Shown: positions 45,845-53,052 of the stretch, piece after piece
Layout: every line of letters begins with the position of its first letter
How positions within the stretch are numbered: position 1 is the first letter of the stretch
Assembly (NCBI RefSeq): GCF_033153115.1
Contig: NW_026889805.1
Location: forward strand, 14,942,001-15,006,000
From: Saccostrea echinata
Taxonomy: Eukaryota
Length of the DNA stretch: 64,000 nucleotides
Reading direction: 5' to 3'
The notes under the pieces: model-generated
Databases searched by the model: none
The model's input: only the letters and a program-made list of their open reading frames with translations
What the model was told of the DNA's origin: nothing
Program-made: the position numbers and the translations under genes

Positions 45845-46381
45845 GATACATAGCGGGTTCCAGTAAATGTTCTACCAAGCCTCTTTCTTTACTTCTCACT
45901 AAAATATTAACAGTAGTGAAGGAGAAACTTCAGGAGTACTGTGCAACAATATATTTAAGAAGTGATGTAAATCAGATGTGGATACTTAAAAATTCCAAGG
46001 AACTTTTGGAAAATTTGAAATCACAAATTTTTACCAAAATCAACAACATAAAAACTTACGACTTTTCAACACTTTATACAACCATTTCCCACGATAAGTT
46101 AAAGTCCAGGCTTTTTGATATCATTGACAGCTGTTTTTTTTCAATAAAAATGGAACTCGTTAATTTACTTACCTAGTCATTGGTCGTTTGCAAAATTATT
46201 TTGTTAAAAAACATTCTGATTGTACATACAAACACTCTGAAGATGATATTAAAAAGATGCTTGAGTTTCTGATTGACAATATCTTTGTGGTTTTTGGAGA
46301 CCAGGTCTTTCAACAATCTATTGGAATTTCCATGGGTACCAATTGCGCCCAGTTATTAGCAGACCTATTTTTTGTATTCAT
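45845..46381 (+). mobile_element. Penelope-like RT fragment
   Basis: AGSSKCSTKPLS..NQMWILKNSKELLE..IKTYDFSTLYTTISHDKLK, frameshift, then FQQSIGISMGTNCAQLLADLF. Confidence 0.88.
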
Positions 46382-46619
46382 ATTCCATGTCGGGAATCTA
46401 CGTGGAAACCACTACTGCATGTTTCCACGGTTTCCCATATTGGGTAACTTACGGGAAACCACAGGTTGGTTGTTTCCATATAGGGAATCTACTTGGAAAC
46501 CACTATGTGGTTTCCATAAAATGGAAACTATATGGAAACTACTGATGTCACGATTCCCATATGTTTCCATCGGGAAACCTGGCTTTTCATCCTATGTATA
46601 ATTTCAGCCAAACTCTGTC

Positions 46620-47010
46620 GCTTCAGGCAAATGGCTCGGATCAAAGGGTTTCTAGAAAGTAAGCACTACGAGTCATTGACTTTTATTCCAGGTGGGATTA
46701 GAACAGAATTAATATGGTGGATAAACCAATTCGAAATTTCAAATGGGAAATCAATCATAGCCTCAAACCTATCAATGATTCTTACATCAGATGCCTCAGG
46801 CCTAGCATGCGGGGCCATCTACAAAACACAGAAAGGTTTTAGTCCCCAATAGATAAATCCTATGACATAAATGCAAAGAAACTCTTGACAGCATTTTAGC
46901 ACTTCAATTATTCTCAATTCAAAGAGAAATATTCATAAAATTAGACGACGTACCAACTGTAGCACACATAAACACAATTGGTGGAACAAAAATAAATTAG
47001 TAAATCATCT
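46620..47010 (+). mobile_element. DIRS/Ngaro-type retrotransposon RNase H remnant
   Basis: ELIWW..NGKSI..ILTSDASGLACGA, then decayed (H)INAKELL and VAHINTIGGTK motifs typical of DIRS RNase H. Confidence 0.7.
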
Positions 47011-49431: not shown

Positions 49432-52400
49432 ATGAGGGTAACGATACCAATATTGCTGGCCCTCAGCGCTCTGGCACTCGGAAAAATAGAAAGAGTGCCC
49501 ATGCCTGCGAATATGTGCAAGATTTACAGAAACCTTGGTACGGAGTATAAAAAAACAGGAAACACGAAAACGCAGCATGAAATACAGGACCTAGGGCTTA
49601 AGCAATATCTTTGGGAAACCGATCGTACCCGACCGTCCAAGAAAATTCCCGACGCCACAGTGAAATACATCGAAAGTTTAGACAGAGAGATTTACAATGC
49701 AGCCAGCCAGCAAGGTAGAAAAAAGAGGCAAGCTGGGTGGTACCGTGGCGAACGGAAGGAAATTCGAATGCTTAGTGATGAAGAGAGGCGGGCAGTTTTT
49801 AATTGCTTTAACACACTTAAACAAACTAAGGTAAATGTACAGGTGAAAATTAAAATTTTATAAGTATATGAATAATTCTCTGTAATCACATAACTACTGA
49901 TACACCCATTGAATTTCACGCTCTACATGTATCTGAAATAGCTAAAATCATTTCTGCGTTCATTTTATTTAAAATCTGTTTCAGACATTAGAGCCCAATG
50001 TATACGATGCTTTAGCTAGTGTTCATCACGGTGCAACTACTCCAGTAGCTCGTTTTGGTTGTGGCTTCCTTGGATTCCACAGAATTTATCTCCTAAGGTT
50101 TGTACACCGTTTGCATTAGTCCCCACCCTACTTTGTATCAATTTGGGTCATACCATATCGGCATTACCCTATTATTCAGACTATCATCTTAGTGATATTT
50201 TAAGGAACAACAAGTATTCCTATTGTAGTCGACTAGTCCTACTGACGATTACAGATTTTTTCAAATGTGGTCTCAGAAATACAAATAAGGGTGCAAAGTT
50301 TTAGAGCAAGTGTATACAAAGAAAAGGATTAATCCCACTAAAATTTATTATGTACAACATGAGGGATTCCGCTGCACAGGAATATGCATAAAAAATCCCA
50401 GGTTATGCAAACTCTTTCACTCATATCAAATTTGGTACCCTAATCCAAAGTACCAATTGGTAAGGATCTTCTACAGATTATGGGTAGAAAGGAACACTAC
50501 TACCGTGTACTTGCCGAAAAAACGGAATTGAAAAATTATTTGAAATCGTTTCCACATTTATTTTTAGATTAGAGTTGGCGATGAGGCAATACTGTGGCCC
50601 CACGATAACTATTCCGTACTGGGCAACTACACTGGACGACCCACTTCAAGACCCTGCTTTATCCGTTGTATGGTCTCCCGAGTTCTTTGGAAATGCTTAC
50701 AATTTCGTGGAAACAGGGCCATTCGCCAACTGGACAGACCGCTCAGGAAGAAGAATATCTCGTAACCTGAATAACATTGGGTCCCTCATCAACGAAAGAG
50801 ACATTGAACAAGTGATTGAACGAAACAAACATTATCATGACATTTTTTACCGCCCGGAAAATCCATCTGCAGCAAATTTAGTAAATACCATAGAAGGGAT
50901 TCAGAACAATCCCCACGGGTTTGTGGGAGGAACTATGAATCGAATGAATATTGCATCATATGATCCACTTTTCTTTTTCTATCACGCATTCGTCGACTAT
51001 ATATTTGAAAAGGCTAGAGAGAGTTTTAGGAACAGAGGCTTTAACCCTGCAAACGATTACCCAGAATGCGTAGGCGATCATGCAGCCCAGTCTCCAATGG
51101 CCAGCTATACATTCTTTAGAAACATCGATGGTCTGAATGACATCTGGACTAATCAGTACTTTTATTATACCGATCCACCAACTTGTTCAGCACTAAATAG
51201 AGACTGTGGGTCAAAATACCTTGTATGCAGAAACACGAGAGGACAATGGAAATGTCAGTCTAGAGTAACTAACTCTGTATTTGATGTTTCTCCAGAGATA
51301 CGTATGGCATCTTATGCATTGAATGAGCAACTTCCTGGTCAGAGATTTCAAGTAACTAGAGGTAACGTTAACACCGGATTAACTGGTAACATTAACACCG
51401 GATTAACTGGTAGCATTAACACCGGATTAACTGGTCCAACGGATCAACTTGGAGGAACAGTTCAACAAAATCCTTGGAACTTAGCTGGTCCCAAAGTAGA
51501 ACTGCCTGTTTCTCCTCCTCAAACATCTGGTGCTAGTCCGTTTACAGAATCACAAATGGGAACAAATGTTGCCCAGCAATTTGGTGCTGGTGGCAATACA
51601 TTGTCACAACAGGCACAACCTGATCCCCTTCCTAGACAAATTGGAATTGGCCAACCGCAAAATATCCCTGGTTTTCAAACCTCTGTATTAAGTGAAACAG
51701 GTACCTCTCAATTTGGTAGTCAAATGGTACACTCACTGCCAGTTCAACCATCTCCAGTACAATCACTATCAGTGCAATTACCAGTACAGTCACAACCACC
51801 ACAAGGAAATTTGCACACAGGTGTGCACTCTGCTTTTAACCCTTTTGATCCAAAAAATCAGCAACAAGGAATGAATGGTGCTGGCAATGGCAATATGGAA
51901 TTACCTGTAATGGGTAGTCCAGGTGGTGGAATGGAACTTCCAGTGATGAATCCTGTTGTGGATCCTGTGAATACATTTGAACCCATTGGAAATCCAATGG
52001 AGCAAATAGGTCCTAATCCACAGGTATCTGGTCCAGAATTACAAGTTAGGAATCCACAAACAGTTGCACAATCTCCACCTGTTGTCAATCCCGCTCCAGC
52101 AAAATCACCTGTGGATATAGGTCCAAAACCCATTCCAATTACACCACCTCCTAAACCAACAAATCCACCTCAACCTGTTCAGCCCCTAGAACCTCGACCC
52201 CAGCCACCTTCCATCATCTCTAATCTAAATCTACCTGGCAATCAACAAGGAGGAAGTGGTAATTTCTTCAGCTGGCGAACACAACCTCAAAATTCATTCA
52301 GTATGAGAAGACAGAAACGCAGTGTAAAGCAAGATTTGCCCTTGCCACTTGACAATGAAAGGACTTCATGGGTACACCAACTGGCCTATCCAATTCAAAA

Positions 52401-53052
52401 TACCTTTGAAATTGATGGAGTTGCCGATTCCTCCAAATGGCTTTACGTGCCAGTAAGTGTTACAGTTGTAAGGTCACCAAATCGTACATTTGAGATTCAT
52501 GGATATGAAAACAGTATGAATTCTCCATATGATATCTATGATCCAATACAGTCTAGACAATTTCAAAGAAGACTGACCACGCAAGCACTACCAAAGCGAT
52601 CACATTCATCAATAAGTGGTTCTGGTGCTTCCCAGATTTATTTGAAGTCTGATGGCTTGTCTTATGATGGTACCTACATGGACTACGTAATTGTTGATGA
52701 ACGTTTGCCAATATCAGAGTACACAGGGTTTGTGGCAATAAAAGACCCAAAGTATGGAAAATCTGACACACATGTTTCTGTATTTGACTCACTAGGACAA
52801 ATTTGTAAACCAAGATGTGCAACTTCTAAATCAAGATCCAACCCCAAATATCGCCCCTGTTCAGGAGTTATTGAAGCTGTCACTTCTTCTCCAGATATGG
52901 CTTACAAGAGCATTCCAGAAGCAATAATGGACATGTGGGCCGTCAGAGATCCATATCCTCCTCGCATGTACAGACCAACATACCTTGAATTCCTTTGTGA
53001 CAGTACAAACACTCTTTACTGGGAAGGCTGTCAGAATGACAGATATCAATAA
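49432..53052 (+). CDS. Secreted tyrosinase-like (type-3 copper family) protein with degenerate copper site and long G/P/Q-rich linker, 998 aa
   Basis: Exons 49432-49830, 49985-50097, 50568-53052 (phases 0, 2); 2997 nt open. Signal peptide MRVTIPILLALSALALG. Motifs RKEIRMLS, FLGFHR, IPYW, GPFANW, HGFVGGTM..ASYDPLFFFYHAFVD. C-terminal domain QNTFEIDG..W.YVPV..SDGLSYDG.Y..VDERLPIS..C.P.C..PCSG as recalled for mollusc tyrosinase-like proteins. Confidence 0.93.
51361..51432 (+). repeat. Coding 24-bp tandem repeat x3 (G[N/S][V/I]NTGLT)
   Basis: GGTA(A/G)C(G/A)TTAACACCGGATTAACT three times, in frame. Confidence 0.95.

What the first reader, a model, noticed from the sequence alone, without database searches (positions are those of the whole stretch)
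49985..50985. Intact tyrosinase-like gene missing two of six copper-binding histidines: candidate pseudo-enzyme
Seen: after splicing in exon 2 (absent from the ORF track in this frame), CuA reads ASVHHGATTPVARFGCGFLGFHR. The usual AH.G..F..WHR His is Arg (CGT, 50051-53). CuB reads EGIQNNPHGFVGG, so the usual E..HN..H first His is Gln (CAG, 50902-04). The other four His are retained, and the 998-codon frame, splice sites and signal peptide are intact. Known: type-3 copper oxidases need 3+3 His. Inference: losing one ligand from each site in an otherwise preserved gene suggests a non-catalytic or altered-metal-binding structural protein (shell matrix, periostracum or adhesive). The extra His in VHH could partly compensate.
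Basis: partly seen in the sequence, partly recalled or inferred. Interest (0 to 1): 0.8.

Follow-up and report, generated by a model that had tools for sequence, protein, structure and literature searches.

The report
Oyster tyrosinase-like protein losing copper ligands
This rock-oyster gene encodes an expressed, secreted tyrosinase-fold protein that lacks two of its six copper-binding histidines. Its counterparts in other oysters have independently lost other ligands while the rest of the fold stays conserved, so it is most likely a non-catalytic descendant of a copper enzyme.

Summary
The three-exon gene (49432-53052, +) equals NCBI's 998-aa "uncharacterized protein LOC133173779 [Saccostrea echinata]". 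The second CuA ligand is Arg156 (CGT 50051-53) and the first CuB ligand is Gln283 (CAG 50902-04); the other four His are kept.

Transcript contigs from four samples in three studies are spliced exactly as predicted. All four carry CAG. Two carry exon 2 with no difference; the other two have one unlocated mismatch in exon 2.

Orthologs form one well-supported oyster clade with these ligand patterns:
- Ostrea edulis HHHHHH
- S. cucullata HHHQYH
- S. echinata HRHQHH
- Crassostrea virginica HRNNHY
- a second Crassostrea-like cluster ---NHY

That is at least 7 substitutions at 5 of 6 ligand positions. In contrast, 29 of 31 other family-conserved residues in the tyrosinase domain are unchanged (Fisher p = 0.0003). 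The tyrosinase domain (67-73% identity between genera) and a C-terminal beta-sandwich domain with no Pfam match (71-78%) are conserved above the linker (46-57%).

The most likely reading is a copper-site-degenerate, non-oxidase tyrosinase-fold protein. A matrix or adhesive role is untested. The kind is known (hexamerins, Biomphalaria Hcl-1). About 8% of related mollusc tyrosinase clusters also lack ligands.

The parts
49432..49830 (+). Exon 1 (residues 1-133). It holds the signal peptide (1-17, 49432-49482), a helical N-terminal region, and the start of the tyrosinase domain (RKEIRMLSDEERR...).
   Evidence: Translation. Spliced contigs end this piece at the predicted donor. Identical to P0001. 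The AF2 model gives pLDDT 76-94 over this region. The signal peptide is called by inspection only.
49717..49728 (+). RKKR (residues 96-99), a furin-like dibasic site ahead of the tyrosinase domain.
   Evidence: Conserved as RxKR in the consensus of 116 family members and in all oyster orthologs. Cleavage is inferred, not shown.
49985..50097 (+). Exon 2 (113 nt, residues 134-171), which carries the whole CuA motif.
   Evidence: Pfam PF00264 positions 2-39 match at 14.6 bits, below the cut-off for this 38-aa piece alone. Both joints are GT..AG in 4 runs. Single-copy in the genome.
50024..50026 (+). CAT, His147: CuA ligand A1, retained.
50051..50053 (+). CGT, Arg156, at CuA ligand position A2 (His in 92% of family members).
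   Evidence: S. cucullata and O. edulis have His here in an otherwise near-identical motif. C. virginica also has Arg. Confirmed without mismatch in runs X1 and X5. One unlocated exon-2 mismatch remains in X4 and X6.
50078..50080 (+). CAC, His165: CuA ligand A3, retained (FHR).
50568..53052 (+). Exon 3 (residues 171(part)-998 plus stop). It holds the rest of the tyrosinase domain, the linker and the C-terminal domain.
   Evidence: PF00264 matches at E = 1.5e-18 and 68.4 bits, above the 22.6-bit cut-off. Spliced contigs.
50902..50904 (+). CAG, Gln283, at CuB ligand position B1 (His in 95% of family members).
   Evidence: No difference here in any of 4 runs. Gln is shared with S. cucullata. It is Asn in the two Crassostrea-type sequences and His in O. 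edulis.
50914..50916 (+). CAC, His287: CuB ligand B2, retained (Tyr in S. cucullata).
50983..50985 (+). CAC, His310: CuB ligand B3, retained (Tyr in the Crassostrea-type sequences).
51343..52305 (+). Pro/Gln/Asn/Gly-rich linker (residues about 430-750), predicted to be disordered. It includes a 24-nt tandem repeat of 3.1 copies at 51361-51435 (GN(I/V)NTGLT) and two GMELPVM motifs.
   Evidence: pLDDT is below 50 over residues 430-769. Tandem Repeats Finder. Identity between genera is 46-57%, the lowest of any region.
52306..52320 (+). RRQKR (residues 751-755), a second furin-like site directly before the C-terminal domain.
   Evidence: Conserved as R/K-rich ...KR|SV in all five oyster orthologs. 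Absent from paralog P0008 and from the snail and mussel homologs. Cleavage is inferred.
52321..53049 (+). C-terminal Cys-containing beta-sandwich domain (residues 756-998) with no Pfam match.
   Evidence: No Pfam hit at E below 1. The AF2 model has pLDDT 87 and pTM 0.83. Foldseek gives no PDB match at E of 0.001 or better, and the best VIA Z is 5.2, to generic Ig-like or pilin sandwiches. Identity between oyster genera is 71-78%.

Best explanation
The gene encodes a secreted member of the mollusc 'type a' tyrosinase family that has stopped being a binuclear-copper oxidase but is kept as a folded protein.

The orthologous gene shared by ostreid oysters went through a long stem branch. After that, selection no longer protected the six copper-ligand histidines. 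Different ligands were then replaced independently in different lineages:
- Saccostrea ancestor: B1 His to Gln
- S. echinata: A2 His to Arg
- S. cucullata: B2 His to Tyr
- Crassostrea: A2 to Arg, A3 to Asn, B1 to Asn, B3 to Tyr

The residues that build the four-helix tyrosinase fold, four conserved cysteines, the N-terminal region and a C-terminal beta-sandwich domain all stayed under purifying selection.

In S. echinata, a positively charged Arg occupies the CuA axial-ligand position and Gln occupies an equatorial CuB position. A coupled Cu2O2 centre, and so tyrosine hydroxylase or DOPA oxidase activity, is unlikely (inferred).

The precursor probably enters the secretory pathway. It is probably cut at two conserved dibasic sites into a copper-less tyrosinase-fold module with a long disordered Pro/Gln-rich tail, and a separate beta-sandwich module (inferred). 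The retained function is probably binding or structural rather than catalytic. Which extracellular material it serves (shell matrix, cement or other) is unknown.
For: Shown:
- Codons and gene model, identical to NCBI protein P0001.
- Membership of PF00264. The model's fold is closest to Bacillus/Priestia megaterium tyrosinase (TM 0.75-0.78 on the target, E about 1e-12).
- Gln283 aligns with CuB His of solved hemocyanins. Arg156 sits at H2 of the H2(8)H3 motif.
- Ligand strings of orthologs are HRHQHH, HHHQYH, HRNNHY, ---NHY and HHHHHH. The pattern is constant in all members read of the two Crassostrea-type clusters.
- The five sequences form a clade with 100% support and the topology ((C. virginica, cluster P0004), (Ostrea, (S. 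echinata, S. cucullata))). With Ostrea nested inside and fully canonical, the losses are independent.
- There are 7 parsimony changes at the 6 ligand positions. Only 2 changes occur at 31 other positions that are at least 90% conserved in the wider family: 5/6 against 2/31 positions changed, Fisher p = 0.00027.
- Domain identities between genera are tyrosinase 67-73%, C-terminal domain 71-78% and linker 46-57%.
- The gene is expressed and correctly spliced in 4 samples from 3 studies. Ten exon-3 SNPs split 7 synonymous to 3 non-synonymous, and all 3 SNPs in the tyrosinase domain are synonymous.
- It is single-copy, and the nearest paralog is 41% identical.

From the literature:
- A single-ligand mutant (H63F) of Streptomyces tyrosinase has no reactivity toward L-tyrosine even when a dicopper centre is forced (PMC6312201).
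- Ligand-deficient type-3 copper proteins are accepted as non-respiratory or non-catalytic in hexamerins and Biomphalaria Hcl-1 (PMC5201427).
Against: - No metal content or activity was measured. S. echinata still has four His, plus Gln (a possible weak ligand) and an extra His148.
- O. edulis keeps all six His, so the clade may not be uniformly inactive, and the ancestral protein may have been an enzyme until recently.
- The permutation test shows the ligand columns change no faster than random columns of the domain (p = 0.18). The data therefore show loss of constraint, not selection against copper binding.
- dN/dS could not be computed because ortholog DNA was not obtainable.
- Arg156 is verified in only two of the four samples. 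Two samples have one unlocated mismatch in exon 2.
- Tissue of expression is unknown.
- Proteolytic processing and secretion rest on sequence motifs only.
Confidence: 0.7

Rival explanations
1. It is an altered-metal or altered-chemistry enzyme. The remaining ligands (His147, His165, His287, His310, possibly Gln283 and His148) still hold one or two metal ions (Cu or Zn), and the protein catalyses a different or weaker reaction, as TYRP1/TYRP2 do with zinc.
For: Four of six His are retained, together with Glu280, Asn284, Phe161, Phe306 and Asp314 around the site. The A2 histidine is the flexible axial ligand in Streptomyces tyrosinase (PMC6312201). Zinc-using tyrosinase-related proteins exist (PMC3658974).
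Against: Zinc-binding TYRPs keep all six His. Orthologs lose different ligands, and C. virginica keeps only A1 and B2, so no common alternative site is conserved across the clade. Arg at A2 places a cation where CuA sits. The H63F single mutant is already inactive on tyrosine.
Confidence: 0.15
2. The tyrosinase domain is simply decaying. Only the C-terminal beta-sandwich domain, released at the RRQKR site, is functional, and the tyrosinase part survives as a passenger or pro-region.
For: The C-terminal domain is the best conserved part at 71-78% identity. A clade-specific dibasic site precedes it. The ligand positions evolve at about the domain's average rate.
Against: The tyrosinase domain is almost as conserved (67-73%) and clearly more so than the linker (46-57%). 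29 of 31 family-conserved non-ligand residues, including 4 Cys, are invariant in the clade. All three tyrosinase-domain SNPs are synonymous. There are no frameshifts or stops in five species.
Confidence: 0.1
3. It is an assembly error or a rare allele. One or both codons are really His in most S. echinata.
For: Each codon is one base from a His codon. Runs X4 and X6 carry one unlocated mismatch within the 113-nt exon 2. The sister species has His at position 156.
Against: CAG at 50902-04 is unchanged in contigs from all 4 samples, and Gln is shared with S. cucullata. CGT is unchanged in X1 and X5, which come from two different studies. Ligand loss is the rule in the clade.
Confidence: 0.05

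Closest known systems
Arthropod hexamerins and pseudo-hemocyanins (cryptocyanins)
   Same: They descend from a type-3 copper protein, have lost one or more copper-ligand histidines, keep the fold, and are secreted and abundantly expressed as non-catalytic, non-respiratory proteins (as summarised in PMC5201427).
   Different: They belong to the arthropod hemocyanin/PPO superfamily (PF00372), which is a different lineage from PF00264 tyrosinases. They act as hexameric storage proteins, and no evidence here points to storage or oligomers.
Biomphalaria glabrata hemocyanin-like Hcl-1/Hcl-2 (PMC5201427)
   Same: They are mollusc PF00264 proteins in which each copper-binding unit has a canonical His replaced. 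The replacements are fixed across strains, the proteins are expressed in a secretory gland, and a non-oxygen-binding role is proposed.
   Different: They derive from multi-unit hemocyanin (type j) with its own beta-sandwich domains. The oyster protein is a single-domain 'type a' secreted tyrosinase with a different, unmatched C-terminal domain and a long disordered linker. Here the losses differ between orthologs.
Canonical mollusc secreted tyrosinases ('type a' PPOs; alpha-subclass; for example Pinctada PfTy, mussel byssal tyrosinases)
   Same: They share the signal peptide, the PF00264 domain, the short 8-residue A1-A2 spacing typical of type a (PMC11803259), membership of a large lineage-specific expansion (at least 34 tyrosinase-like loci in this genome), and in many members the same C-terminal domain.
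   Different: Canonical members keep all six His: 77 of the 88 sequences in which all six positions could be scored. This orthogroup does not.
Vertebrate TYRP1/TYRP2
   Same: They are tyrosinase paralogs with changed metal use and changed or absent oxidase activity.
   Different: They retain all six histidines and bind zinc (PMC3658974). They are membrane-bound gamma-subclass proteins.

Membership tests
Tyrosinase central domain family (Pfam PF00264) | Significant match to the family profile | tested here: met
   Exon 3 matches at E = 1.5e-18 and 68.4 bits against a 22.6-bit cut-off, covering profile positions 42-209 of 214. Exon 2 covers profile positions 2-39 at 14.6 bits, below the cut-off on its own because it is only 38 aa. 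The precomputed Pfam entry for P0001 is PF00264.
Tyrosinase central domain family (Pfam PF00264) | Four-helix-bundle tyrosinase fold | tested here: met
   In the AF2 model, residues about 100-425 have pLDDT mostly above 90. Foldseek's best hits are Priestia/Bacillus megaterium tyrosinase, with TM 0.75-0.78 normalised to the target and E about 1e-12. This is a prediction, not an experimental structure.
Functional type-3 (coupled binuclear) copper oxidase | CuA site with three His, H1(n)H2(8)H3 | tested here: not met
   The site reads H147 ... R156 (8) H165. The A2 column is 92% His in the family, and is His in S. cucullata, O. edulis and paralog P0008.
Functional type-3 (coupled binuclear) copper oxidase | CuB site with three His, H1(3)H2(n)H3 | tested here: not met
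   The site reads Q283 (3) H287 ... H310. The B1 column is 95% His in the family. Gln283 aligns with His in solved hemocyanin units.
Functional type-3 (coupled binuclear) copper oxidase | Binds two Cu and oxidises phenols or catechols | not testable with these tools
   This needs metal analysis and an enzyme assay on recombinant or native protein.
Copper-ligand-deficient type-3 copper protein derivatives (pseudo-enzymes such as hexamerins and Hcl-1) | Descent from a type-3 copper protein with loss of at least one canonical ligand, fixed in the species | tested here: met
   Gln283 is present in all 4 samples and in the sister species. Arg156 is verified in 2 samples, with 2 unresolved. Ligand loss occurs in 4 of 5 orthologs.
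Copper-ligand-deficient type-3 copper protein derivatives (pseudo-enzymes such as hexamerins and Hcl-1) | The gene and fold are kept under purifying selection after ligand loss | tested here: inconclusive
   Protein-level evidence is in favour: an intact ORF in 5 taxa, 29/31 conserved non-ligand residues invariant, the tyrosinase domain more conserved than the linker, and 7 synonymous to 3 non-synonymous SNPs.
Copper-ligand-deficient type-3 copper protein derivatives (pseudo-enzymes such as hexamerins and Hcl-1) | Expressed | tested here: met
   Spliced transcript contigs are present in 4 runs, 4 samples and 3 studies. No retrocopy exists in the genome.
Type-2 PPO / hemocyanin C-terminal shielding domain (PF14830, PF12143, PF18132) | The C-terminal domain is homologous to the known shielding beta-sandwich domains | tested here: not met
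   There is no Pfam hit at E below 1. No hemocyanin or PPO chain appears among the structural matches. The best Z is 5.2, to generic Ig-like or pilin sandwiches. A weak or missing match does not prove that the folds differ.

The most novel reading that the evidence does not exclude
Ostreid oysters carry a conserved, lineage-specific pseudo-tyrosinase: a tyrosinase fold re-used without copper. It might act as a phenol/DOPA- or quinone-binding module, or as a structural module. It would be delivered as a convertase-processed polyprotein together with a Pro/Gln-rich disordered segment and a previously undescribed beta-sandwich domain. Repeated ligand loss across mollusc tyrosinase expansions (about 8% of the family clusters sampled) would then be a general route by which biomineralising or adhesive secretomes gain non-catalytic scaffold proteins, as with the inactive carbonic-anhydrase-like proteins of shell matrices.
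Probability: 0.2. Interest if true: 0.7.

Novelty: new member of a known kind. Interest (0 to 1): 0.5.

Why it matters
Bivalve genomes hold tens of tyrosinase genes, and these are routinely counted as oxidases for shell cross-linking, pigmentation, immunity or adhesion. This case shows that at least one conserved oyster orthogroup, and roughly one in twelve related mollusc clusters, cannot have a canonical dicopper site. Functional inferences drawn from "tyrosinase expansion" therefore overcount enzymes.

The oyster clade also offers a natural experiment. Ostrea has all six ligands, while Saccostrea and Crassostrea have 2 to 5. Close orthologs could be used to compare copper binding, activity and localisation, and so find out what a tyrosinase fold does once copper is gone.

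This is not a new principle. Hexamerins and Biomphalaria Hcl-1 are precedents.

Tried and rejected
- **Ortholog DNA for dN/dS.** I used protein-level conservation and within-species SNPs instead.
- **Joining the exons.** Exons were translated and searched separately. Full-length analyses used NCBI's own annotated protein P0001 as returned by the search.
- **ESM Atlas look-up of the C-terminal domain.** Not available.
- **Fold search of the C-terminal domain.** No Foldseek match at E of 0.001 or better. VIA-wide's best Z was 5.2, to generic beta-sandwiches. The idea that it is the hemocyanin/PPO shielding domain is not supported.
- **A recent His-retaining duplicate or a retrocopy.** Rejected. 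The gene and exon 2 are single-copy.
- **Selection against copper binding.** Not supported. Six random tyrosinase-domain columns reach 7 or more changes in 18% of draws. Only loss of constraint is shown.
- **Literature.** No paper in the held library mentions the four locus names, links "type-3 copper" with "pseudoenzyme", or describes His-deficient bivalve tyrosinases.
- **Earlier scan notes.** Nothing relevant.
- **Pairwise mapping artefacts.** The initial pairwise mapping flagged P0162 as HHHSHH. The multiple alignment shows a normal His there, so it was dropped as an alignment artefact.
- **ORFs upstream at 45916-46850.** No Pfam match.
Full report
**What is in the sequence**

Reading 49700-51300 and translating the three pieces separately gives this model:
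- Exon 1 runs 49432-49830. It opens with a hydrophobic signal-peptide-like N-terminus and ends ...RKEIRMLSDEERRAVFNCFNTLKQTK.
- Exon 2 runs 49985-50097 (TLEPNVYDALASVHHGATTPVARFGCGFLGFHRIYLL, plus 2 nt).
- Exon 3 runs 50568-53052.
- Both introns are GT..AG.

They were searched one by one. The word search with exon 3 returned NCBI's own 998-aa product, "uncharacterized protein LOC133173779 [Saccostrea echinata]" (P0001). It is 100% identical and contains the three pieces in that order. I used P0001 for all full-length work.

CGT at 50051-53 is Arg156, and CAG at 50902-04 is Gln283. The only correction is that exon 2 ends at 50097.

**Are these really ligand positions?**

Exon 3 is a clear PF00264 match (E = 1.5e-18). 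Several lines place the two residues at ligand positions:
- Arg156 lies 8 residues before His165 of FHR. This is the H2 position of the Cu(A) H1(n)-H2(8)-H3 motif (PMC3658974).
- The A1-A2 spacing matches the 7-9 residues reported for mollusc "type a" PPOs (PMC11803259).
- phmmer against solved structures puts Gln283 under the first His of the HxxxH CuB motif in hemocyanin functional units.
- In a 116-sequence family alignment, the columns of residues 156, 283, 287 and 310 are 92-98% His outside the oyster clade.
- Of 88 sequences in which all six positions could be scored by pairwise alignment, 77 read HHHHHH.

**Is it real, fixed and expressed?**

Nine public runs hold the stretch. I laid four of them, from four samples and three studies.
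- Each holds one contig that skips exactly 49831-49984 and 50098-50567 (GT..AG). These are spliced transcripts.
- The assembly has a single copy of the gene and of exon 2, so a retrocopy is excluded.
- All differences in the exon-3 pieces are listed, and none touches 50902-04. Gln283 is therefore present in all four samples.
- Exon 2 is identical in X1 and X5. In X4 and X6 the piece carries one "other letter" that the tool's table does not place. Arg156 is thus verified in two samples from two studies.
- Ten exon-3 SNPs among the samples split 7 synonymous to 3 non-synonymous. The three in the tyrosinase domain are all synonymous.
- The contigs say nothing reliable about expression level or tissue.

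**Comparative picture**

Cluster look-ups gave full-length annotated orthologs. Ligand strings, in the order A1 A2 A3 B1 B2 B3, are:

| Sequence | Ligands |
|---|---|
| S. echinata | H R H Q H H |
| S. cucullata (83-88% identical) | H H H Q Y H |
| C. virginica | H R N N H Y |
| Unnamed Logan cluster, 464 members, exon 3 only | - - - N H Y |
| O. edulis | H H H H H H |
| Nearest S. echinata paralog P0008 | H H H H H H |
| Candidula homolog | H H H H H H |
| Dreissena homolog | H H H H H H |

All members read from the two Crassostrea-type clusters show NHY.

A quick ML tree (the careful search did not finish) puts the five oyster sequences in one clade with SH-aLRT support of 100, on a long stem of 1.11 changes per site. 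The internal topology is ((C. virginica, Logan cluster), (O. edulis, (S. echinata, S. cucullata))). As I recall the accepted genus relationships, this topology matches them. Ostrea is nested and canonical, so the ancestor had six His and the losses are independent. B1 was lost twice (Gln and Asn) and A2 twice (Arg in both S. echinata and C. virginica), with further single losses at A3, B2 and B3.

**Specific loss of constraint at the metal ligands**

Fitch parsimony on that tree gives 7 changes at the six ligand positions. The domain means, in changes per site, are 0.74 for the tyrosinase domain, 0.65 for the C-terminal domain and 1.06 for the linker.

Thirty-six tyrosinase-domain positions are at least 90% conserved in the wider family. 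Five of them are ligands; A3 falls below 90% in that alignment. Of the 31 non-ligand positions, 29 are invariant in the oyster clade. These include R108, E110, R112, F161, R166, E173, the PYW motif, GP, W226, R236, E280, G292, DP.F, D314, YP and four Cys. By contrast, 5 of the 6 ligand positions changed (Fisher p = 0.00027).

Six random columns of the domain reach 7 or more changes in 18% of draws. The ligands therefore behave like average sites, not faster ones. This shows relaxation, not selection against copper.

Identity between genera is 67-73% in the tyrosinase domain, 71-78% in the C-terminal domain, 64-70% in the N-terminal region and 46-57% in the linker. Distances to outgroups are similar for Ostrea and the His-deficient lineages. 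The fold is being kept and the metal site is not.

**Architecture**

AlphaFold2 with the 116-row alignment gives three regions:
- a confident N-terminal helical region plus tyrosinase domain (pLDDT mostly above 90);
- a disordered region at 430-769;
- a confident C-terminal domain.

The tyrosinase part is closest to Priestia megaterium tyrosinase (TM 0.75-0.78).

The C-terminal 243 residues, modelled alone, form a beta-sandwich (pLDDT 87). This domain has no Pfam hit, no Foldseek match at E of 0.001 or better, and a best Z of only 5.2, to generic Ig-like or pilin sandwiches. It is not demonstrably the hemocyanin/PPO shielding domain.

Two dibasic motifs suggest convertase processing, which is inferred only:
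- RKKR at 96-99, general in the family.
- RRQKR|S at 751-755, specific to the oyster clade.

I could not read model coordinates, so I cannot say where the Arg156 side chain points or whether the C-terminal domain covers the former active site.

**Mechanism**

The most likely reading (about 0.7) is a secreted tyrosinase-fold protein without a working coupled dicopper centre.
- Shown: gene model, substitutions, expression, and clade-wide parallel ligand loss with retained fold residues.
- Inferred from established enzymology: loss of activity. One-ligand mutants such as H63F are already inactive on tyrosine (PMC6312201). From memory, the older His-to-Gln/Asn mutants of Streptomyces glaucescens tyrosinase lost one copper and activity.
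- Inferred from motifs: secretion and processing.
- Not supported by any data here: a shell-matrix, periostracum or adhesive role.

Rivals are an altered-metal enzyme (0.15), a decaying passenger domain attached to a functional C-terminal domain (0.10), and an error or rare allele (0.05, mainly for Arg156).

**Comparison with what is known**

The kind is known. Arthropod hexamerins and pseudo-hemocyanins, and the Biomphalaria hemocyanin-like proteins Hcl-1/2, are type-3 copper proteins with replaced canonical His (PMC5201427).

I found no paper in the held library describing ligand-deficient bivalve tyrosinases or these loci. This is not proof of absence, since key bivalve tyrosinase papers are not open access.

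The phenomenon is also not unique to this gene. Other family representatives show well-aligned ligand losses: P0050, P0089, P0119, P0121, P0145 and P0180, plus the partial P0132.

**Verdict**

- Observation: confirmed.
- Interpretation: supported and extended to the whole oyster orthogroup.
- Novelty: a new member of a known kind.
- Interest: moderate (0.5). It is a clean, testable natural series of orthologs, with biochemical confirmation still missing.

**Tools unavailable or limited**

- Read laying was limited to one call.

Noticed in passing
window 52321-53049 (residues 756-998): A conserved Cys-containing beta-sandwich domain with no Pfam family and no convincing PDB fold match (best Z 5.2).
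   Followed up: partly
window 49717-49728 and 52306-52320: Two furin-like dibasic sites: RKKR at residues 96-99 and RRQKR|S at 751-755. The first is general in the family. The second occurs only in the oyster orthogroup, directly before the C-terminal domain, and suggests polyprotein-like processing.
   Followed up: partly
window 51361-51435: A 24-nt tandem repeat of 3.1 copies (96% matches) encodes GN(I/V)NTGLT units in the disordered linker. In the alignment, S. cucullata has one unit fewer, so repeat number differs between the sister species.
   Followed up: partly
proteins P0050, P0089, P0119, P0121, P0145, P0180, P0132 (representatives search): Other, unrelated members of the same mollusc tyrosinase family also lack one to five ligand histidines in well-aligned motifs, for example HHNVIL, HQYHHH, HNHHHH, FLNYHL, HYNQHR and INNQHR. 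Ligand loss recurs in the family. The source species are unknown.
   Followed up: partly
window about 50623-50625 (residue 190, PYWA): All five oyster orthologs have Ala where the paralog, snail and mussel homologs have the Asp of the YWDST motif. This is a clade-wide change outside the copper ligands that predates the ligand losses, because Ostrea has it too.
   Followed up: no
P0009 (C. virginica XP_078324007.1 isoform X1): It carries an 83-residue N-terminal extension ahead of the conserved MRVTI signal peptide. The other orthologs lack this extension. It is probably an annotation or alternative-start artefact.
   Followed up: no
G000 contigs C54, C30, C1, C62, C75: At least 34 tyrosinase-like exon matches occur in the S. 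echinata assembly, several in tight clusters (for example C54 at 15.6-15.7 Mb, C1 at 52.69-52.87 Mb, C54 at 36.4-36.5 Mb). Some pairs on different contigs have identical scores (C54/C62, C75/C77, C30/C54), which may be uncollapsed haplotigs.
   Followed up: no
window 45916-46852: A run of overlapping + strand ORFs lies upstream of the gene. None has a Pfam match at E of 0.01 or better, and their nature is unresolved.
   Followed up: partly
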